From Octopus bimaculoides (taxonomy: Eukaryota), in NCBI RefSeq assembly GCF_001194135.2, contig NC_068995.1, positions 55,375,945 to 55,439,944 on the forward strand: DNA of 64,000 nt, read 5' to 3'. Positions 26,142-53,699 of this stretch are shown here, in pieces; within the stretch, counting starts at the first letter, position 1, and each line of letters starts with the position of its first letter. A program made the translations under genes and the position numbers. The notes below the pieces were generated by a model. The model did not search any database, was not told the origin of the DNA, and saw only the letters and a list, made by a program, of their open reading frames with translations.

Positions 26142-26213
26142 AAGTTAAGGAGATAGACAAAGTTAAGGGGATATACAAAGTTAAGGAGATAGACAAAGTT
26201 AAGGAGATGGACA
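26142..26213 (+). repeat. Minisatellite, 4 x 18 bp (aagttaaggagatagaca)
   Basis: Units start at 26142, 26160, 26178 and 26196, with 0-2 substitutions each. Confidence 0.95.
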
Positions 26214-26762
26214 AAATTTATATTTTATATAGATATTAAACAAACAAGCTCTCCTGAATGTTGTAGTTGCCTGTGTCTAATAAAGTCTAATAAATAATTT
26301 AAACAAATATTTCATCTATTTTACACTTTCAGAGAAGAGAAGAAAATAGATTAAAAGCCGCAGCGTAGAAACAAAATGTCTGTTGTTTGTATGATTGCTT
26401 CTGAGAGGACGCGGTGTCTTGAAACGTATCCTACAGCCATAGTCTTCATGATATAAAGGATAGAAAGATTTTCGGATTCTGGTCACAAGCTTTCATATTA
26501 TAGTTTCGCCAATAGAAGCAACTCGTTAAGATTGGGTGCGGCTGTTTGAATGCTTTGTGATTTGGCACGGCTTATCGGACATTCAACCTGCTTTGACGCT
26601 GGAGGCAAACACACGTGCACGCTCACGCAGTGATAAATTAATATATACAATGTGTGAGAGAGAAGAGAGAAAGAAACATTAAACATACATACAAATATAA
26701 CTAGAAGCTGACACGCATAAACAGCGAGAGAGACAGAAGGAGATAGAGATAGATAGAGAGAT

Positions 26763-28056: not shown

Positions 28057-28475
28057 GGCGCAGGCGTGGCTGTGTGTTAAGATGTTTGTTTCCCAACTAC
28101 AAAATTCCTAGTTCAATCCCACTGCATTACTTATGGACAAGTGTCGTCTTCTATATCCTCGGGCCGACCAAAACTTTGTGAATGTGGTAATGTGGTAGAG
28201 GAAAATAGAAAGAAGAATGTATGTGTGTGTGACAGAGTGTGTGTGTGTGTGTGTGTGTNNNNNNNNNNTGTTTGTGTCCAAATCGGTGTTGGTGTGATTA
28301 CGTCCCTTTATCCTAGCAGTTCGTCAAAAAAGACCGATAGAACAAATACTAGGTTTTAAAAAATTAATAAGCACTGGTGTTGAATCATTCGACTACAATT
28401 CTTCAAGATGGTGTCCCAGCATGACCGCCGTCTAATGACTAGTAAAGATCTAATGTCTATTTACAAGTAAAAGAT
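28057..28475 (+). mobile_element. tRNA-derived SINE, family B, full length with internal (TG)n tract
   Basis: Head ggcgcaggcgtggctgtgtgttaag...agttcaatcccactgc, then ctcgggccgaccaaaac, an internal microsatellite and gap, and the 3' half ttacgtcccc...gaccgatagaac...cagcatgaccgccgtctaatgact. Colinear with 42115-42515. Confidence 0.9.
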
Positions 28476-28573
28476 CCTAATTTTCATATGTTTGTTTAAT
28501 AAACGCTACGTGAGTCTTTAATATATAAACTTAGTTTGAAATACAGGAATAAGTAAAAAAATATGTCCTTTTA

Positions 28574-28790
28574 CGTAGACTGAAGGATGAACAGAGACTC
28601 CTTTACTCCCACTTGTGTAAGGGGAAAAGAAACCAGGGAAGATATGAACTGAGATTCAAAGATACTTCAAAAATGAATATGAAGTGGAATGGAATTGATC
28701 ATAATAAATGGCAAATTCAAGCGGGAAAACAACCAGTATGGAGAATGTTTATCAAGTCATGCGAAAGCCATCGACAGTTATCTTCGAAAA
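28574..28790 (+). pseudogene. RTE-clade LINE ORF C-terminal fragment
   Basis: RRLKDEQRLLYSHLCKGKRNQGRYELRFKDTSKMNMKWNGIDHNKWQIQAGKQPVWRMFIK matches the RTE C-terminal pattern RMxDxRxPKxLLYxxLxxGxRxxGRxxxRxKD...W...A.D...WR. Confidence 0.8.
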
Positions 28791-29591
28791 CACTGACTGC
28801 AGATAAGATCAATTTCTCGGTATCATCCATAGCAACAATCTAAATATAATTAGTGCTCCACTAGTTGGCTGGTGGTCACCATGTTGAGTTGTCCTGGAGT
28901 TTAGACACATACATTACGTGTTTATATATTTCCGAGGATTTACTTTATTTCCGTAATTCGCTGTCTTGAATTTGCTTAAATATTAATGAACCACATTTTA
29001 TCGCGACATCAAGGAAATCCTCTTACAGAATTCATTTCCTATAAAGCTCTTAAAGGTCGAAAATCTTCGCAGATTGTAAACATTCTCAGAATAACTACAC
29101 ACATATATAGAGTACTTGCAAAAGTTCCTCTTATACCAAAAAGTCTATTTCTAAGCCGATAGCTTATTAGGATTATATACTGACACTCTTTTAAAGGTTC
29201 ATCTCTAATCGTTTTCATGACACTTTATACACCACAAACTTCATTGTACAGAAAAAATGTATAAAATATGTAAAGCAATAAAATATATAATATTGGTATT
29301 TTCCTAGTCGTACGTCCATAAAGCTCGTTCACTGTCTATGGCTACCTAGCGCCATCCACAGTAATTACACAATTATCGCTGCATCCACCTCAGGAATTCT
29401 TACGTGTACGTTGAGTATAAAACAAATTATACGGGAAACTTTATTGCTCACGACGATCGTTTCGACACATCCTGCATCGCTCCCTCGCGGGTGAGAAAGT
29501 ATACAACTAGTTTAGTGCATCCCACTGTGACAGGCCTCTCGTTAGGTGATGTAATAAGCGGTATCTCTTTAAATGAATTCTGTTTCGCTCG

Positions 29592-29762
29592 GATTTTGCA
29601 ATGATTTACGACGCTGGAAAGGTCATTTATGTAAATTATAAAGAGGAGCGGGCCCAAGACAGTCCCCTGAGGGACACCATTGGTGACTCCATCGACCACA
29701 ACTTCTTGTGTTCTATTCGCCAGGAAATACTTAATCCAGTGTAGAAATTTTCCAAGGATTCC
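29592..29762 (-). pseudogene. CR1/Jockey-superfamily LINE reverse transcriptase fragment
   Basis: Translates to [57 protein letters not shown], containing the classic GVPQGxxLGPLLFxxYINDL RT motif. Confidence 0.92.
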
Positions 29763-32250
29763 AAAATGTTCATGGATAAGTTCATGAACTTTGGTTCTTT
29801 TCTCTCCCTCTATCTCTCTCCCTCTTTCTCTCTCTCTCTCTTAATATATATATATATATATATATATATANNNNNNNNNNNNNNNNNNNNNNNNNNNNNN
29901 NNNNNNNNNNNNNNNNNNNNNNNNNNNNNNNNNNNNNNNNNNNNNNNNNNNNNNNNNNNNNNNNNNNNNNNNNNNNNNNNNNNNNNNNNNNNNNNNNNNN
30001 NNNNNNNNNNNNNNNNNNNNNNNNNNNNNNNNNNNNNNNNNNNNNNNNNNNNNNNNNNNNNNNNNNNNNNNNNNNNNNNNNNNNNNNNNNNNNNNNNNNN
30101 NNNNNNNNNNNNNNNNNNNNNNNNNNNNNNNNNNNNNNNNNNNNNNNNNNNNNNNNNNNNNNNNNNNNNNNNNNNNNNNNNNNNNNNNNNNNNNNNNNNN
30201 NNNNNNNNNNNNNGAGGAAATTCAAAACTAAACCGCCACAATAATTGATAATGAATCAGAAAATGCTGAGATAGTAATTTAAAATAAATCGATATGAATT
30301 TCTTGTAATTTATATCGAATGATCAAAACACCCAAGAATTATATACTGCAGCTCTTTTTTTTTTTTTTGTATCTTTAACCATGAAATTTACCGCCGGTTA
30401 GCAATATCGATAATTCTATATGTTAAAAGTATTATCTGATCTGCAAGCAGATTGAGATTCCGCTGCATACACAAGTGTATTATAAATCCTTGATTGCAGA
30501 AAATATCAACCTATAGCATATATATTAGCTACACTATTTTCTCAATCATTTCAAATTAACTTCCCTCCTTCTAGGGGTTAGTTAGCAAATGGCGCTAGAA
30601 GGCTTTTTTCCGTCTACCTCACATTGGGAATTTTTTATTTAAAAAAAAAGCGTATATAGTATACTTCATCCTTTATAATAATTATCTAAATTTATGCTAT
30701 TACCTCACTCCTTAATCTATCTCGCTCTTCTCTCACTGTCTATCTCGTTCGCTCTTTAAATCTATTGACACATAACTACATAGATAGATAGATAGATAGA
30801 TAGATAGACAGATACATATATTGTTATCCCATATATAAAATTCCCCTTTATTAATATTACTGTTTCAATGATTTACATATACATTAGATTTTATAACGGA
30901 ATTGCTACAAGTTTTCACGATAATTAAGATATTTGTCATTCAGAGAAAGTTTTGTTCAAAGATAATTACGATGGAATTTCATTTTCTTGTCTATTTTTAT
31001 ATTCTCGTATTTATACATTAACAGAGATGAAGATAAAATCCTTTATAGTTACTTATATGTAAATATATGATATACATTTCATCTTTGTCCTATTTGATCT
31101 GGAATTTAAATATGAATATATATGCTCATGGGTTGGTATGAATACGTACTCATGTATATATGCATGAATACATATGTATGTGTATGTATATGTGTACAAA
31201 GAGAGAAAGAGAGAGAGAAGGAAAAGAGAAGAAAGGAGGGTGTGGGTTAGAGAGCGACCATACACACGCATATTCATTACGACCATGTGATTGTATCTCT
31301 TACATGTCTACAGGGATACATGCACTCACACCCACGTTCATCTCCCTTTAGAAACAGACGCAAGCGGTACTAGTCACATGGCAGCTATGCGCATATGCGT
31401 ATACGTTTGCCGTCCGATAATGATCCCGAATAGAATAGTAATATGTAACCCTAACAAGCTATTGTCGAATATCTCCAATGGGGCGTAATATGTAGATCTA
31501 AAGAATATTCAATTGAATTCAATATGTAGATTAATGCAAATAATTGGCAATGAAATATATATATATATATCAAGAACTGATACCACCGGAAAATTTTTGA
31601 CGAAAATAATCTATTCATATATGCTAAAAATTTGAATGCGTGTATGTATGTATGTATGTGTTTGTATGTTTGAAACAGGTTTTGGCGTATATGCTTTCAT
31701 CGCAATACCGTTGCTTGCATATGTTGTTGAATAGTCTTGATTAGATTTGTAGCTAAGTTGCATAATTGCAATTATCTGATAATTTGAAGTTCGATATGTT
31801 GCTTAAATAGAACGACATAATCATCAGATTCGTCAGATCAAATGTAATGCTTTCGATTATTATTTTTTTTACATATTCTTTATAATGGCTCTGATAAAAG
31901 TTCAAAAACACGTCATGTTTGATTGCTTTCGAAATACTTCCTCGTTTTAATACATACATATACGTACATACTTAAATTCATATATATACTGACACACATT
32001 GTATATATATATATATATATATATATNNNNNNNNNNNNNNNNNNNNNNNNNNNNNNNNNNNNNNNNNNNNNNNNNNNNNNNNNNNNNNNNNNNNNNNNNN
32101 NNNNNNNNNNNNNNNNNNNNNNNNNNNNNNNNNNNNNNNNNNNNNNNNNNNNNNNNNNNNNNNNNNNNNNNNNNNNNNNNNNNNNNNNNNNNNNNNNNNN
32201 NNNNNNNNNNNNNNNNNNNNNNNNNNNNNNNNNNNNNNNNNNNNNNNNNN

Positions 32251-48327: not shown

Positions 48328-51300
48328 TGCATACACACAAACAAACACACACACACACACATATATATATATGTATAGGCACATTTACATATTGAGGTAG
48401 GGGTGTATCTGAGTAGGTACGGATATGTATGTGTGCGTGTGTGTGTGTATGTGTGTGTTCGTGTGTGTGTGTGTGTATACTTCATCTACAATACATGAAA
48501 CGATACTTTGAGAATTGGAAGGGGGTGTGGGGAGAGGGAGAGGAAGAATGCGAGTGAGTACTAGCGTTACTTATAAACTTGTGCTTGTTTGAGCTAGATT
48601 CATTTTATTCAACTAATTTTCGATTATTGAAATTTATATATTATTCAGTTTTTATATGCATAGATTTGTTTGTATTTGCGTAGTTGTATGCGAATACATG
48701 CATATTTGTATACTGTTATACATATGTATATATATATATATATATACTGTTAAAAGCATATCAAAAACAGTAAAAATTATTGTAACAATGCCGGAACAGC
48801 CATAAAACGGATTTTGACGCAATTAACTAAATGTATTTGTCTTTTCTATCAACCTGAGTTAGACAAAGACTTCCTCTAGCGATACAGTGTTATTGATCAT
48901 GAATGTTTTAAGTAAACCGCTACACAAACATTATATATTTTGCTATATGCAGTCGTTTTCTCATTAAATTTTTCAATTGAAATATGCGCCAATGAATGAG
49001 AAACAGCATATTTTAAAGCAACCATTTTTTATTACTGAATGGCAATATACATTTTAACATATATTTGAAATTAAATATACACTATCAGTTTACCAGTATG
49101 CATGAGTGTCACATATTATTCCATATAATTTTTATCAAGACGCATAAAACTTATGTACATTTTCAAATTTTCTTTTATTACGGGGGGAGATGCGTAACTT
49201 TTGTTGTGATAACTTAATGTTTCCAACCGTATTTTAGTGTTATTGACAAATATTTCATTGTATATCATACTGCTAATGGCCTTTTAATAGCCAAACAATA
49301 GTTCCACATTCGCTTCAAATTTTAGAATTTCCTTCGTCTACGTTCTCAGTGTACATCATCATAACATTTCCCATCAGTGCCCTTTATTCCTTAGGTCTTT
49401 GAATGTATCCCACGTATTTTATCACTTAATGTAGCTATTAGTAAAATCGGTGAAATCATTTTATGCATCCCATTAACAAATGAAAACTACCGTAGGGTAT
49501 CCTTGTCATCAGCAATTACGAGAGTAAACGAACATCATCTTTTCCCTTCCATTTTCTTTCTTTTTTTTTTTTCTATTTGTTCAGTTTGTACTTTCGATTT
49601 TCTGAGGTGTGAAAAAGTGCTGTTATGTGCACTACAGCCCCCAAAGCATGTTCCCATCTGAGTATTCTAATATCACTTGTGTTCCTAATTCTCCAATATA
49701 ATGGAACCAATTATACATTGTTATCCGCTGTGAGTTGCATACCCTCTATCTTCAATGTTTAAGAATAGTTATTCTTCTAATATTTAGTGAATATCTGAAT
49801 GAAACACGTTATTAACAATCCTTTGAAATACTCGAGCAAAAATGCATTAGTGAAACTCTCACGAAATATTGCATCACTTTTATTACACGTAAGTACATAA
49901 TAGTTTGCAACCATTAAGATAGATCAGTGCTAAAGCTACATAAATCATGCGTAGAACCTTAAATATTTATCGACATAGGAATAATAGTAATCCCAGTCCG
50001 ATATACAACGGATTTGTATTGCACAACCTTATGGAACTAAATAATCTTGACACTCTATCCTCCTGCTGCAACCTTAGCTGGGTTAACTTGTTATCGACAT
50101 TAACACTAATTCGCAGATGAAGAGAAAGATGTTTAAATGAAAGGCGAATGTCTTTGAATTCTGTACCAGTTAATAAGTACGTATTTTCCTCAAATGTGAT
50201 AGAATCGCTTCTTATCAGATATTTTCACCAACGGATCGCTAATTCCGCCACCTATAAGAATGTTTTTCAAAAAATTATGCATATTGTTGGAACCTAACTT
50301 TTGGCACCATAAAATCAATGGATTTGTCGTATTTTCAAAATATGTAAGCACAAAACACTTGGCTTGCAAATTGCTGTAATTGTCTAGTCCCCTCCCCAAA
50401 AGGATACATCATCATCATCTACATCATCATCATTATATGAATATCAGAGTAACAAACGTGGTATAGCTAGCATTTCGTAATCTCAATTCAAATGACAGTA
50501 GCAATTTTGTCTGCCTGTTTAAAATTATATTCATAAAAAAATACAGTGTTTTTGTATAAATTCATCTAAGAATATGTAAATTTCTTGGCATTTATGAGAC
50601 TTTGAGAGACCGTCATTTGAATTGATGAGTTTCTGAAAACTGAAGGCTTTAATTTGTTTGTAAGATTTTCCCCAGCAAATAAGATATATTCTTTCCTGAG
50701 AATTATTCATTTCAGCGCAGTTAGACCACTCTCCAGAATTTGCTTCCTCTGTAAACACGCATAAACATGAATAAAAATACAGTATACTGAGGAAATACTT
50801 CATTTTCGTTTCCCTCGGTGATGCCACGTATATTCTGAATCTCGTGGTCGATGTTTCTCACTGTCTTTTATTTTGTATTTTTTACAAAGAACATCTTTAA
50901 AAATAAATCAATTTGAAAGCGTTGATATATTGCGCAATGGTCATACCTTTACACTTTGAAAACATATCACTAATGTTATAATGTCATAACAAATGATCTC
51001 TTCACCAAGGAATAAACTAAAATACGTTAACTACAAAATCTTTACTTCGTAGAATCTTCTGCTTACATCTTTACAAGGTAAACTCTTCACGGGATGTCTT
51101 TCTGCACTTTTGTAAATAAAACATTCTCGCTCTTAAGAAATATATATTGTTATTCTGCACTTCGATGCTGAAATATATCCTCATTATAGCAAGTTTTTCA
51201 GTGTTTCCCTTTTCTTTTCTAGCTTTCATTGGAGAAATCATGTTGATTTATTCTCTTGATTTATTAAATATTTTATTGTGCATTTTATTGTCTTTTTTAC

Positions 51301-51762
51301 ACATCGTTCTTTTATTGTTATTTTCTTATGTTTCCGTCCTATGGTTATTGATGCGTTTTTCATTCATGGCCTCTTTTTTTATTTATTTATAAATATATAA
51401 CCATGCTTAAGCTCTATATCTATTTATAGCTAATGTACATTTTCTTCGATCCATATATTTCTTCCCTTTACTGCTGATATTCGTAGAAAACATGCTCCTG
51501 TAGGAAACTAACATCTCTAAAAATTTACACCACGTGAATTGTAAATTCACTATTTAGTATTTCATACCTCACCCGCTTTCACAAATATATTCGACCACTT
51601 TACTTATTCTGATTATCAAATCAGAATTCATACTCATTAAAGTGTCATGGAACCGTCTTCGCTTCAAAATGGAACTTATTTCATTATTAACGATGAGAGT
51701 ATTTAACTGGTTTCACGATGTTTTCGCAAGGATCTTCATATATTTTAGGCGTCCCAACTTTC

Positions 51763-51981
51763 TGAACTTTCCAGGAAGCAGCTCATCCTCGGAAATTTCC
51801 AGGAAGTACCATCCCCAGAACATTCCAGACAGACCTCGGAATTTTCCAGGAAGATGCTCATCCTCGGGACTTTCCAGAAGATTGCTCTTCCTCGAAACTT
51901 TCCAAGATGTCCTTGGAACTTTCCAGGAAGTAGTTTTCGGAAATTTCCAGGAAGTTTCTCAACCTTGGAACTTTCCATGAA
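51763..51981 (+). promoter_or_regulatory. Degenerate array of 9 GGAAnTTTCCAGGAAG-type cores (NF-kB/Rel + STAT + HSE-like composite motifs)
   Basis: Cores start at 51763, 51791, 51817, 51838, 51866, 51894, 51915, 51939 and 51967 (spacing 28/26/21/28/28/21/24/28). The array itself is certain; its regulatory role is inferred. Confidence 0.45.
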
Positions 51982-52057
51982 TGGACTCTTTCCAAAGTGG
52001 ACTCCTATTTGCTGGCATCTATTTCTAGCGTATAGGAGTCCACATTGGTGGTCTTTC
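51979..52057 (+). ncRNA. Pre-miRNA-like hairpin (candidate)
   Basis: 51992-52015 pairs with 52025-52048: 24 positions, 2 mismatches, 2 GU pairs, 9-nt loop. An imperfect lower stem forms between 51979-87 and 52050-57. Confidence 0.35.
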
Positions 52058-52092
52058 CTTTTAAGTTTTGTATATATGTATATATATATCTA

Positions 52093-52143
<51 letters not shown>

Positions 52144-52444
52144 TTGTTTTCTCACTTGGTCATTCTCCCTCCCGCACGTTGTTTCTATGCATGCGTACGA
52201 AGGTGCTTCCGACGAGTGTGCGTAAAAACAGGGCAAATATAAGACTTGTATTGTTTGTTATCATATGATAACCGCAAATCTTTCGTCAATTATGATCGGC
52301 AGATGAAAATAGATTATTATTATCAGTAAAACTCAACAATTCATGTACAATAATACCACCGAATAGAAGCAGACATACCGTCTCCCAACAGTTAATTAAT
52401 TCTTTTATTGTTCATTCATTGTTTTGCTGAACCATAAATTTCAA

Positions 52445-52502
52445 TAATAATGATGAAGATGATGATGACGACGACAAGTACGACGATTACGACGACCACC
52501 AC

Positions 52503-52564
<62 letters not shown>
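52445..52564. repeat. (GAT)n/(GAC)n microsatellite
   Basis: Seen directly. Confidence 0.95.
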
Positions 52565-52565
<1 letters not shown>

Positions 52566-53699
52566 AGGGTAATTTATGAGACTTGTCATCTAGATTATCT
52601 GCAAAAGCCATTGTCTAAGAGAACACGTAAGTAGTATATCTGAAGACATTTTTTCTTGTTTGCATTGTTATTCTTAGTATTCTAGACTACTTTTCACAAT
52701 GCAATGCTATTTCTGGATAAAGTCATTATTCCTGAGAACTCTCAAAGAACGACTCTTTATATTATTTCCTTTATATTCGGTCAACCACGGTACTGTAGCA
52801 TATTTCCGGCAAATTTATTTTTGTTGTATGACATTTTATAAAAATGGATGAGAGCTAAAAGAGGTGGAACGTTATGGTAACAAATTCCACGATTCAGTTT
52901 CAATAACCAGAGACGCCATTTTTATTCGGTTACCTGCAAAACAATAATTGCAGTCATAATTTTGAGTGACATGTTCCTTTTATTTCATTAAATTGTACAT
53001 TATTTTAATTTTCAGATTAAAACGTATATTATTGGTGCATATTTTATTGACTGTTTTAGATCTCAGATTTCAGAAAAATATGCGGCAAATAACTCTGCTC
53101 TGTCATCGATAAGACGTGCAATAATAAATCCATTTCTCCCTTAAATCTATTTCGAATTTGATATTATCGAATTACTGTGAGTGAATGATTTGTGCTAACG
53201 AAATTTATTTTATGATAATTTCTCAAGTTACATAATTTACTTACTTGTAATTGACATTTAAATTAATCATCTAATCATTTAGGTTAGCTACGTGATGTCT
53301 ACAGCAAACTAGTTGTCTTAGCGACAGACATGAATAATTGAATGAGGAAACCCATAACCGTGCTATAACTAAGTTGGAGAGAATACTTTGTTGGCGGAAA
53401 CACGTTGCGGATAAGACCAGAAAATGCAATTTATTCTTCGAAATATGTTCGCAGTTAAAATATAAACGCATCATGTGTAAATGCTAGATCTGCCCGGAAA
53501 TAACAATATACCAAACGGAATGAAATGAACAACGTCCAAAACCTAAAATTTTATGTATTTAAACTGCAGCGATATAATTGTTGCTCATTTTCTTGAATCG
53601 ATTCTGAACCCGATGAAACGTATTCAAGTTAACTCACTAACGTTGTCTTCTTTCTTCACCCAAGTCATACACAGCGTATCAACTGCTACCGTTTCCTTT

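What the first reader, a model, noticed from the sequence alone, without database searches (positions are those of the whole stretch)
51763..51981. Homotypic array of nine overlapping NF-kB / STAT / HSE-like cores with diverged spacers
Seen: nine cores with variable 21-28-bp spacing. Six are full kB-type decamers: GGAAATTTCC (51791, 51939), GGAATTTTCC (51838), GGGACTTTCC (51866) and GGAACTTTCC (51915, 51967). Six overlap a TTCnnnGAA site (51769, 51797, 51844, 51921, 51945, 51973). Seven keep GAAnnTTC. Cores are conserved while spacers vary, and unit lengths are mostly not multiples of 3, so it is not a coding repeat. No comparable cluster occurs elsewhere in the 64 kb. Established: GGGACTTTCC is the canonical kB site, TTC(N3)GAA is the STAT/GAS element, and nGAAnnTTCn is an HSF dyad. 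Inference: a minisatellite-derived immune- or stress-inducible enhancer, or alternatively the transposase-binding subterminal repeats of a DNA transposon.
Basis: partly seen in the sequence, partly recalled or inferred. Interest (0 to 1): 0.7.

Follow-up and report, generated by a model that had tools for sequence, protein, structure and literature searches.

The report
Decayed 28-bp minisatellite with TF-like cores
The "array of nine NF-kB/STAT/heat-shock sites" is real sequence, but it is one 28-base unit copied head to tail about nine times in non-coding DNA, so the sites are copies of a single ancestor and nothing found here shows it is an enhancer.

Summary
Window 51759-51988 has nine head-to-tail units plus a vestigial tenth. 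The consensus is CCTCGGAAnTTTCCAGGAAGnnGCTCAT, arranged as three ~75-bp blocks of full, full and short units.

The array is a diverged, non-coding minisatellite, so its sites are nine descendants of one 15-mer, not nine independent events. That 15-mer also matches ETS and NFAT cores. It never forms the three-pentamer unit that a heat-shock element needs.

Core columns are somewhat better kept than spacers (scan-corrected p = 0.016). One sequence cannot tell selection from out-of-register homogenisation.

No frame has protein relatives. There is no Pfam domain within about 6 kb, no Rfam hit, no second or inverted copy, and no terminal inverted repeats.

A strong 57-nt palindrome (51992-52048) follows the last unit, then T-rich DNA and a (TA)n tract. 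This resembles the right module of Helentron-derived (HINE) elements, but subterminal inverted repeats were not found.

Genome copy number, orthologues and the organism could not be determined with these tools. Verdict: ordinary, low interest.

The parts
51759..51988 (.). Diverged minisatellite. Nine units of 20-28 bp with consensus CCTCGGAAnTTTCCAGGAAGnnGCTCAT. GC is about 0.45 against a window background of about 0.32.
   Evidence: composition
51759..51833 (.). Higher-order block 1 (units 1-3: full 28, full 27, short 20 bp)
51834..51910 (.). Higher-order block 2 (units 4-6: 28, 28, 21 bp). It contains the only GGGACTTTCC.
51911..51984 (.). Higher-order block 3 (units 7-9: 24, 28, 22 bp)
51984..52008 (.). 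Vestigial tenth unit (GACTCTTTCCAAAGTGGACTCC). It overlaps the left arm of the palindrome.
51992..52048 (.). 57-nt palindrome immediately after the last unit. It has perfect 12-bp arms, GTGGACTCCTAT (51997-52008) and ATAGGAGTCCAC (52032-52043), extended to about 22 bp. Its link to the array is inferred from adjacency only.
   Evidence: DNA fold -17 kcal/mol, z -7.4, 0 of 200 shuffles as good; RNA z -6.0 on + and -4.9 on -; no other copy in the window
52049..52142 (.). T-rich stretch (GGTCTTTCCTTTTAAGTTTTG) followed by a (TA)n microsatellite at 52063-52142. This is the right-hand boundary of the unique sequence.
   Evidence: family D2

Best explanation
This is an old, decayed, non-coding minisatellite.

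One ancestral unit of about 28 bp carried the 15-mer GGAAnTTTCCAGGAA. It was amplified head to tail by replication slippage or unequal exchange, first into a block of full, full and short units (about 75 bp), and then that block into three copies. Since then the copies have diverged by substitutions and by small insertions and deletions in the spacers.

Every unit inherited the same 15-mer. That 15-mer is built from alternating GGAA and TTCC half-sites, so it necessarily matches several motif families at once: Rel, STAT, the HSF dyad, ETS and NFAT. The 'homotypic cluster' is therefore a by-product of common descent, not evidence of selection for binding sites.

The self-complementarity of GGAA and TTCC gives the single strand a tendency to fold on itself. 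Such folding is the kind of substrate that favours slippage.

Shown here: the repeat anatomy, the lack of coding signal, single copy within the window, and motif multiplicity by descent. Inferred: the slippage mechanism, neutrality, and the order of the duplications.
For: - Tandem structure: spacings of 75/28/73 bp and a 28-bp consensus; TRF period 26-28.
- Divergence: units are 54-86% identical. Units at the same block position are only slightly more alike than others (0.74 against 0.68), so this is an old array with some mixing.
- Not coding: unit lengths of 28, 27, 20, 28, 28, 21, 24, 28 and 22 bp shift the frame. The +0 ORF has no relatives among 5.8 billion proteins. The -1 frame hit only two unrelated repetitive proteins among 1.84 billion representatives. 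There is no Pfam hit for any ORF of 45 aa or more between 46 and 58 kb, including all frames across the array. Two further ORFs are not on record.
- No RNA family and no tRNA.
- No second or inverted copy in 64 kb and no terminal inverted repeats.
- Motif ambiguity: the same cores give CAGGAAGT 3 times and TGGAAA 9 times, and no complete heat-shock trimer.
- Unrelated tandem arrays built round TTTCCAGGAA with quite different spacers occur in metagenome contigs L024, L048, L074 and L027. Such arrays therefore arise independently.
- The single-stranded array folds better than shuffles (z -3.0).
- The window is full of tandem repeats (265 TRF rows).
Against: - Among the three blocks, the periodic 11-bp core GAAnTTTCCAG is better conserved than the rest: 27 of 33 columns invariant against 16 of 38, with a scan-corrected permutation p of 0.016. 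Selection on binding sites would produce this. So would homogenisation between out-of-register units, and so would alignment anchoring.
- The cores are good matches to experimentally used vertebrate sites. GGAAATTTCC repeated three times is a commercial NF-kB p65 gel-shift probe (PMC3398016). TTCCAGGAA is a STAT5 ChIP-seq site (PMC3907443).
- An NF-kB p105 subunit and a STAT are expressed in octopus haemocytes (PMC4199593), if the window really is octopod.
- A minisatellite with a 28-bp unit that binds Rel/NF-kB proteins is known in humans (HRAS1; PMC3464111).
- The adjacent strong palindrome is not explained by simple slippage.
Confidence: 0.62

Rival explanations
1. The array and the palindrome are the central tandem-repeat module and right-hand module of a non-autonomous Helentron-type rolling-circle element (HINE / DINE-1-like). 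The repeats would have arrived by transposition into T-rich DNA and would be multi-copy in the genome.
For: Published HINE layout: a left module with a subterminal inverted repeat (subTIR), an inverted repeat and a microsatellite; a short central array of satellite-like repeats; then a roughly 60-bp right module holding the 3' subTIR and a palindrome. Insertion is into T-rich or TT sites without target duplication (PMC7492417; PMC4067079).

Here a very strong palindrome starts 4 nt after the last full unit (51992-52048; z -7.4). It is followed by TTTCCTTTTAAGTTTTG and (TA)n. Such elements are abundant in another mollusc, the oyster (PMC7492417).
Against: - No subTIR pair was found. Reverse complements of 11-13-mers next to the palindrome give 2 upstream matches, about what chance predicts. 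Neither match has the nearby complementary repeat.
- The palindrome arms occur nowhere else in the window.
- The nearest clear upstream microsatellite, (CAT)n at 50405-50436, is 1.3 kb from the array. The published distance is 10-500 bp.
- Published HINE palindromes are 5-10 bp. This one has 12-bp perfect arms and about 22 paired bases.
- The published central repeats cited here (the Cg170 satellite family of oyster HINEs) have longer units than 28 bp.
- No second copy exists in 64 kb.
- No Rep/helicase domain lies in 46-58 kb.
Confidence: 0.2
2. The array is a working homotypic enhancer. Rel-homology and/or STAT (or ETS) factors bind the repeated cores cooperatively and confer immune-inducible transcription on a nearby gene.
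For: - Six decamers fit GGRRNNYYCC and five are perfect TTCCAGGAA.
- The cores match validated vertebrate p65 and STAT5 sites.
- Cores are more conserved than spacers (p = 0.016).
- There is precedent for a 28-bp-unit minisatellite bound by Rel/NF-kB proteins.
- The factors exist in octopus haemocytes.
Against: - All sites descend from one unit, so their number is not independent evidence.
- The motif reading is non-specific, because the cores also fit ETS and NFAT, and no heat-shock trimer is present.
- No recognisable exon or domain lies within about 6 kb.
- No extra kB-type decamer lies outside the repeat units nearby; only two solitary TTCnnnGAA sites (51046, 51480) and one GAAnnTTC (51052) occur within about 1.3 kb.
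- The adjacent CpG patch at 52101-52300 has 11 CpGs per 200 bp. That is above the 95th percentile but unexceptional in a window whose overall CpG observed/expected ratio is 0.90.
- Binding preferences of cephalopod Rel and STAT proteins are unknown to me.
Confidence: 0.1
3. The array is the set of transposase-binding subterminal repeats at one end of a cut-and-paste DNA transposon.
For: Short repeated motifs in direct orientation near an element end are typical of hAT, CACTA, P and Mutator elements (established knowledge).
Against: - No terminal inverted repeat brackets the array. The only consistent inverted repeat is the local palindrome.
- No inverted copy of the motif array exists within 51 kb to the left or 12 kb to the right.
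- No transposase domain lies in 46-58 kb.
Confidence: 0.04
4. The array is the remnant of a protein-coding repeat, for example (L)PGKF(R/Q)G on the minus strand, now a pseudogene.
For: All three plus-strand frames stay open across the array for 55-158 codons, and two minus-strand frames for 81 and 114 codons; the third minus frame is interrupted by stops. The minus frames read LPGKFRK, LPGNFRK, LPGKFQG and LGKFRG.
Against: - The open frames simply reflect a unit without stop triplets.
- Unit and block lengths (75, 77, 74 bp) break any frame.
- There are no relatives in 5.8 billion or 1.84 billion proteins, apart from two spurious repetitive hits.
- There is no Pfam hit.
Confidence: 0.02

Closest known systems
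Human HRAS1 minisatellite (28-bp unit, bound by Rel/NF-kB family proteins; PMC3464111, which cites Trepicchio & Krontiris 1992 and Green & Krontiris 1993)
   Same: A non-coding minisatellite with a unit of the same length (28 bp), in which each unit carries a sequence that Rel-family proteins can bind. It is the precedent for a minisatellite acting as a multi-site factor platform.
   Different: The unit sequence is unrelated: GGCGTCCCCTGGAGAGAAGGGGGAGTGT-type against CCTCGGAAnTTTCCAGGAAG. Binding and reporter effects were shown experimentally for HRAS1, and nothing has been shown here. HRAS1 lies about 1 kb from a known gene (from memory), whereas no gene is recognisable within about 6 kb here.
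Central tandem repeats plus 3' palindrome of Helentron-derived non-autonomous elements (HINE / DINE-1; Cg_HINE of the Pacific oyster, PMC7492417; PMC4067079)
   Same: A short internal array of tandem repeats, followed within about 60 bp by a palindrome able to form a stem-loop, then T-rich DNA. There is no coding capacity. The host phylum is plausibly the same (Mollusca).
   Different: The subterminal inverted repeats that define the family were not found. The palindrome is longer than the published 5-10 bp. The repeat unit is 28 bp, shorter than the units of the oyster satellite family cited (Cg170). Multi-copy status is untested.
Synthetic concatemer probes and reporters of kB or GAS sites (for example the p65 gel-shift probe with GGAAATTTCC three times, PMC3398016)
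   Same: The same decamer, GGAAATTTCC, repeated in direct orientation. The natural array looks like an engineered multimerised response element.
   Different: In the probe the sites are 12 bp apart and identical. Here they are 20-28 bp apart, diverged, and embedded in a longer unit. Resemblance to a reagent says nothing about function in this organism.
GGAA-repeat microsatellites used as ETS-type response elements (EWS-FLI1 at GGAA repeats; from memory, not checked here)
   Same: Repeats made of GGAA cores can become binding platforms simply because they are repeated.
   Different: Those are pure 4-bp microsatellites acting in a tumour-specific context. This is a complex 28-bp unit with alternating GGAA and TTCC.

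Membership tests
Minisatellite (tandem repeat, unit about 10-100 bp) | Head-to-tail copies of one unit | tested here: met
   Direct-repeat families with 28- and 73-77-bp spacing; alignment of 10 units; TRF period 26-28
Minisatellite (tandem repeat, unit about 10-100 bp) | Unit length in the 10-100 bp range with several copies | tested here: met
   Nine units of 20-28 bp plus a vestige
Minisatellite (tandem repeat, unit about 10-100 bp) | Copy-number polymorphism between individuals (VNTR behaviour) | not testable with these tools
   No other assembly or reads of the species could be reached
NF-kB/Rel-responsive enhancer | Sequence matches to the kB consensus | tested here: met
   Six GGRRNNYYCC matches in 219 bp against 1.8 expected in the whole window. 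They are copies of one ancestral site.
NF-kB/Rel-responsive enhancer | Binding by a Rel-homology protein; inducible accessibility and reporter activity | not testable with these tools
   Needs gel shift, ATAC-seq or CUT&Tag, and reporter assays
NF-kB/Rel-responsive enhancer | Sites conserved in orthologous loci while surrounding DNA diverges | not testable with these tools
   No eukaryotic genome collection is available. The within-array proxy (core against spacer, p = 0.016) is ambiguous.
NF-kB/Rel-responsive enhancer | A target gene within reach | tested here: inconclusive
   No Pfam domain in ORFs of 45 aa or more between 46 and 58 kb. Short exons and distant genes would be missed.
STAT GAS element | Palindromic TTCNNNGAA | tested here: met
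   Seven matches in the array, five of them TTCCAGGAA. TTCCAGGAA is a STAT5 ChIP site in human T cells.
Heat-shock element (HSF) | At least three contiguous alternating nGAAn pentamers (established knowledge) | tested here: not met
   GAAnnTTCnnGAA and TTCnnGAAnnTTC both have 0 matches in the whole window. In the core the third GAA is one base out of register (TTC-CAG-GAA).
Cut-and-paste DNA transposon end with subterminal repeats | Terminal inverted repeats, with a matching motif array in inverted orientation at the other end | tested here: not met
   No consistent inverted repeat brackets the array within 47-57 kb. No minus-strand copy of the array exists in 64 kb.
Cut-and-paste DNA transposon end with subterminal repeats | Multiple copies in the genome | not testable with these tools
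   Single copy in the window. The genome is not available.
HINE (non-autonomous Helentron) | Central tandem-repeat array followed within about 60 bp by a 3' palindrome | tested here: met
   Palindrome at 51992-52048 directly after unit 9/10. Definition from PMC7492417.
HINE (non-autonomous Helentron) | Pair of 11-15-bp subterminal inverted repeats (the family-defining signature) | tested here: not met
   Only chance-level matches: 2 observed against about 2 expected. No companion inverted repeat. Palindrome arms are unique in the window. A diverged or truncated 5' end cannot be excluded.
HINE (non-autonomous Helentron) | Microsatellite in the left module, 10-500 bp upstream of the array | tested here: inconclusive
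   The nearest clear microsatellite, (CAT)n at 50405-50436, is 1.3 kb upstream. Only an A/T-rich low-complexity tract at about 51375-51400 lies closer.
HINE (non-autonomous Helentron) | Insertion in T-rich DNA and many copies per genome | not testable with these tools
   The 3' flank is T-rich followed by (TA)n. Copy number is unknown.
Protein-coding repeat | Constant reading frame and detectable protein relatives | tested here: not met
   Frame-breaking unit lengths. No relatives.
microRNA precursor (for the palindrome only) | Match to a curated family at its gathering score | tested here: not met
   The best hit is mir-368 at 29.5 bits against a gathering score of 58. This is a generic hairpin resemblance only.

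The most novel reading that the evidence does not exclude
The array is a ready-made multi-site Rel/STAT (or ETS) response element in a cephalopod. It was either born in place from a minisatellite or delivered by a Helentron-type element carrying the array and its 3' palindrome. In the second case, copies of the same element would have seeded similar inducible enhancers across the genome. That would be an invertebrate parallel to transposon-borne immune enhancers in mammals.
Probability: 0.06. Interest if true: 0.6.

Novelty: new member of a known kind. Interest (0 to 1): 0.12.

Why it matters
As it stands the finding matters little. Minisatellites are common, and this window alone has 265 tandem-repeat calls. 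Any unit that happens to contain GGAA/TTCC half-sites will look like a cluster of immune transcription-factor sites.

The useful lesson is methodological. Motif clusters inside tandem repeats must be counted as one event, not nine, and GGAA/TTCC cores cannot be assigned to one factor family from sequence alone.

It would matter only in two cases. In the first, orthologues or functional assays show that the cores are maintained and bound, giving a rare documented cis-regulatory element in a cephalopod. In the second, the array-plus-palindrome proves to be a dispersed mobile module carrying factor sites.

Tried and rejected
1. Protein relatives of the array's reading frames. The +0 ORF gave nothing. 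The -1 frame, searched against 1.84 billion representatives, gave two hits. One is a translated tandem repeat and the other a bacterial leucine-rich-repeat protein. Both were rejected as artefacts of repetitive sequence. Exact look-ups of two further ORFs found nothing.
2. Pfam on all ORFs of 45 aa or more in 46-58 kb: no family.
3. Rfam at gathering thresholds on the whole window, and at permissive thresholds on 51300-52500: only sub-threshold hairpin or low-complexity matches. No tRNA-like SINE heads.
4. A metagenome scan for two cores at array spacing gave 120 or more loci, none homologous beyond the selected core. The multi-match loci are unrelated repeats.
5. Search for terminal inverted repeats and for Helentron subTIRs: chance level.
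6. CpG-island test for a neighbouring promoter: the patch at 52101-52300 is mildly CpG-rich but not exceptional.
7. Organism identification. A LINE-tail-like ORF gave no candidates. A reverse-transcriptase fragment hit only ENA ORFs at 65% identity or less, from unnamed assemblies. So 'octopod' is unverified.
8. A literature search for cephalopod minisatellites found nothing relevant.

Full report
**What is there**

The window is AT-rich (GC about 0.32). It is a gappy draft eukaryotic sequence with 5,085 N and very many microsatellites. It has no tRNA and no Rfam match at curated thresholds.

Between 51759 and 51988 the sequence is a head-to-tail repeat. Cutting it at the conserved core gives nine units of 28, 27, 20, 28, 28, 21, 24, 28 and 22 bp, plus a vestigial tenth unit at 51984-52008. 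The consensus is CCTCGGAAnTTTCCAGGAAGnnGCTCAT.

The repeat finder reports copies spaced 75, 28 and 73 bp apart. Three blocks of 75, 77 and 74 bp align at 83% mean column identity. Each block consists of a full, a full and a short unit. TRF sees the array as two pieces with periods 26 and 28 and 79-84% matches. This is a diverged minisatellite with a weak higher-order period. Units at the same block position are only slightly more alike than other pairs, 0.74 against 0.68.

**Check of the observation**

- The six kB-type decamers are present.
- The six TTCnnnGAA sites are present, plus a seventh at 51888 in a spacer.
- The seven GAAnnTTC cores are present, plus one more at 51951 in a spacer.

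Six of the seven GGRRNNYYCC matches in the window lie in these 219 bp, against 1.8 expected for the whole window. All five exact TTTCCAGGAAG matches lie there as well. Sensitive self-BLAST finds no other copy of the array or of its flanks on either strand.

The enrichment is real, but it follows from the region being a tandem repeat. The nine sites are nine descendants of one site.

**Are the cores conserved and the spacers free?**

Partly. TTCCA is invariant in all ten units, and the neighbouring columns are kept in at least 90% of units. Pairwise identity is 0.78 in the 16-bp core and 0.50 outside it.

The spacers still share GCTCATCCTC, and they carry most of the insertions and deletions. 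Among the three blocks, 27 of 33 columns of the periodic core GAAnTTTCCAG are invariant, against 16 of 38 elsewhere. A permutation test that scans all offsets and core lengths, and so corrects for choosing the core after seeing the data, gives p = 0.016.

The heterogeneity is therefore probably real. One sequence cannot separate three possible causes:
- selection on binding sites;
- exchange between out-of-register units, which homogenises what all units share and scrambles what they do not;
- alignment anchoring on the conserved core.

**What the motifs can and cannot say**

The core is made of alternating GGAA and TTCC half-sites.
- GGAAATTTCC is a perfect palindrome. Repeated three times, it is a commercial NF-kB p65 gel-shift probe (PMC3398016).
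- TTCCAGGAA is found under STAT5 ChIP-seq peaks in human T cells (PMC3907443).

The resemblance is therefore to genuine vertebrate sites.

However, GAAnnTTC is automatically contained in GGAAnTTTCC, so the 'HSF dyad' is not an extra feature. A heat-shock element needs three contiguous alternating pentamers (established knowledge). Neither trimer orientation occurs anywhere in the window, because the third GAA is one base out of register.

The same cores also give the ETS site CAGGAAGT three times and the NFAT core TGGAAA nine times. Sequence alone therefore cannot name the factor.

Unrelated tandem arrays built round TTTCCAGGAA with entirely different spacers turn up in metagenome contigs (L024, L048, L074, L027). 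This shows that such arrays arise repeatedly.

**Coding and RNA**

All three plus-strand frames stay open across the array, and two minus-strand frames do; the third minus frame is interrupted by stops. This is only because the unit lacks stop triplets, and unit lengths shift the frame.
- The +0 ORF has no relatives in 5.8 billion proteins.
- The -1 frame matches only two unrelated repetitive proteins in 1.84 billion representatives.
- Two further ORFs are not on record.
- No ORF of 45 aa or more between 46 and 58 kb hits Pfam.

The array is non-coding, and no recognisable gene or transposase lies within about 6 kb.

**Transposon tests**

No terminal inverted repeat brackets the array, and there is no inverted partner array.

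One unexpected feature appeared. Immediately after the last unit lies a 57-nt palindrome at 51992-52048. It has perfect 12-bp arms and about 22 paired bases. Its DNA folding energy is -17 kcal/mol with z = -7.4, and none of 200 shuffles folds as well. It is followed by T-rich DNA and a (TA)n tract.

This order matches the published layout of Helentron-derived non-autonomous elements (HINE/DINE-1): a central repeat array, then a right module of about 60 bp with a palindrome, then T-rich host DNA. Such elements carry satellite-like repeats throughout the oyster genome (PMC7492417; PMC4067079).

The defining subterminal inverted repeats were not found.
- Candidate matches are at chance level.
- Those matches lack the companion inverted repeat.
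- The palindrome arms occur nowhere else in the window.

The palindrome is also longer than published ones, and the nearest upstream microsatellite is 1.3 kb away. I keep this as the main rival, at about 0.2. As RNA the palindrome also folds well, but it matches no miRNA family at threshold.

**Most likely explanation**

This is an old, neutral, non-coding minisatellite. One 28-bp unit was amplified by slippage or unequal exchange into a block of about 75 bp and then into three blocks, which have since decayed. The self-complementary GGAA/TTCC cores give the single strand extra folding potential (z = -3.0), which is the kind of substrate that favours slippage. That last step is inferred, not shown. 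The transcription-factor look is inherited from one ancestral 15-mer.

**What could not be done**

No eukaryotic genome collection is available. Genome copy number, orthologous loci and length polymorphism, which are the decisive tests, are therefore all open.

The organism could not be identified. A reverse-transcriptase fragment at 29451-29840 on the minus strand hits only ENA ORFs at 65% identity or less, from unnamed assemblies. 'Octopod' is therefore unverified. If it is right, an NF-kB p105 subunit and a STAT are expressed in octopus haemocytes (PMC4199593).

**Comparison with known systems**

The closest functional analogue is the human HRAS1 minisatellite. Its unit is also 28 bp, and Rel/NF-kB family proteins bind it (PMC3464111, citing Trepicchio & Krontiris 1992). 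The unit sequences are unrelated, and nothing comparable has been shown here.

**Verdict**

This is a real but ordinary feature and a new instance of a known kind. Interest is low unless step 1 or step 2 of the next steps gives a positive result.

Noticed in passing
window 51992-52048: A strong 57-nt palindrome directly after the array. It has perfect 12-bp arms (GTGGACTCCTAT / ATAGGAGTCCAC) and about 22 paired bases. DNA folding z is -7.4, and RNA z is -6.0 on the + strand and -4.9 on the - strand. It is unique in the window and matches no Rfam family at threshold. It could be a Helentron-type 3' stem-loop, a hairpin-RNA source, or chance.
   Followed up: partly
window 29451-29840 (-): Fragment of a LINE-type reverse transcriptase (…[22 protein letters not shown]…). 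Its relatives carry PF00078. The best hits are only 59-65% identical, from unnamed ENA assemblies.
   Followed up: partly
window about 9663-9780 (-): A second short remnant of the same reverse-transcriptase motif (…[24 protein letters not shown]…), abutting an assembly gap. It suggests another copy of the same LINE family.
   Followed up: no
window 28553-28840 (+): An ORF (…LLYSHLCKGKRNQGRYELRFKDT…NKWQIQAGKQPVWR…) that I recall as resembling the conserved C-terminal tail of some LINE ORF2 proteins. The word-indexed search found no candidate, so this is unconfirmed.
   Followed up: partly
window 50405-50436 and 52444-52566: (CAT)n on the left and (ATG)n/(GAY)n on the right lie about 2 kb apart in mutually inverted orientation, bracketing the array. 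ATG/TCA trinucleotide tracts are common elsewhere in the window (3587-3877, 4166-4333, 7098-7417), so this is probably coincidence.
   Followed up: no
window 52101-52300: A local CpG-rich patch just right of the (TA)n tract, with 11 CpG in 200 bp and an observed/expected ratio of 1.9. It is above the 95th percentile but not the window maximum. The window as a whole is not CpG-depleted (observed/expected 0.90).
   Followed up: partly
window 26142-26215 and 28430-28481: Two other complex minisatellites that are not microsatellite-derived: an 18-bp unit in 4.1 copies at 91% match, and a 25-bp unit in 2 copies. The array under study is the largest of this class in the window.
   Followed up: no
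loci L024 (757-1215), L048 (5897-6067), L074 (18-105), L027 (3107-3183): Unrelated metagenome contigs carry tandem arrays whose units also contain TTTCCAGGAA or its complement, with entirely different spacers and periods of about 23-50 bp. Their origin is unknown.
   Followed up: no
whole window: The draft is very gappy, with 5,085 N in many runs that often sit inside TA/TG microsatellites. Repeat lengths next to gaps, including some microsatellites near the array, may be assembly-limited.
   Followed up: no
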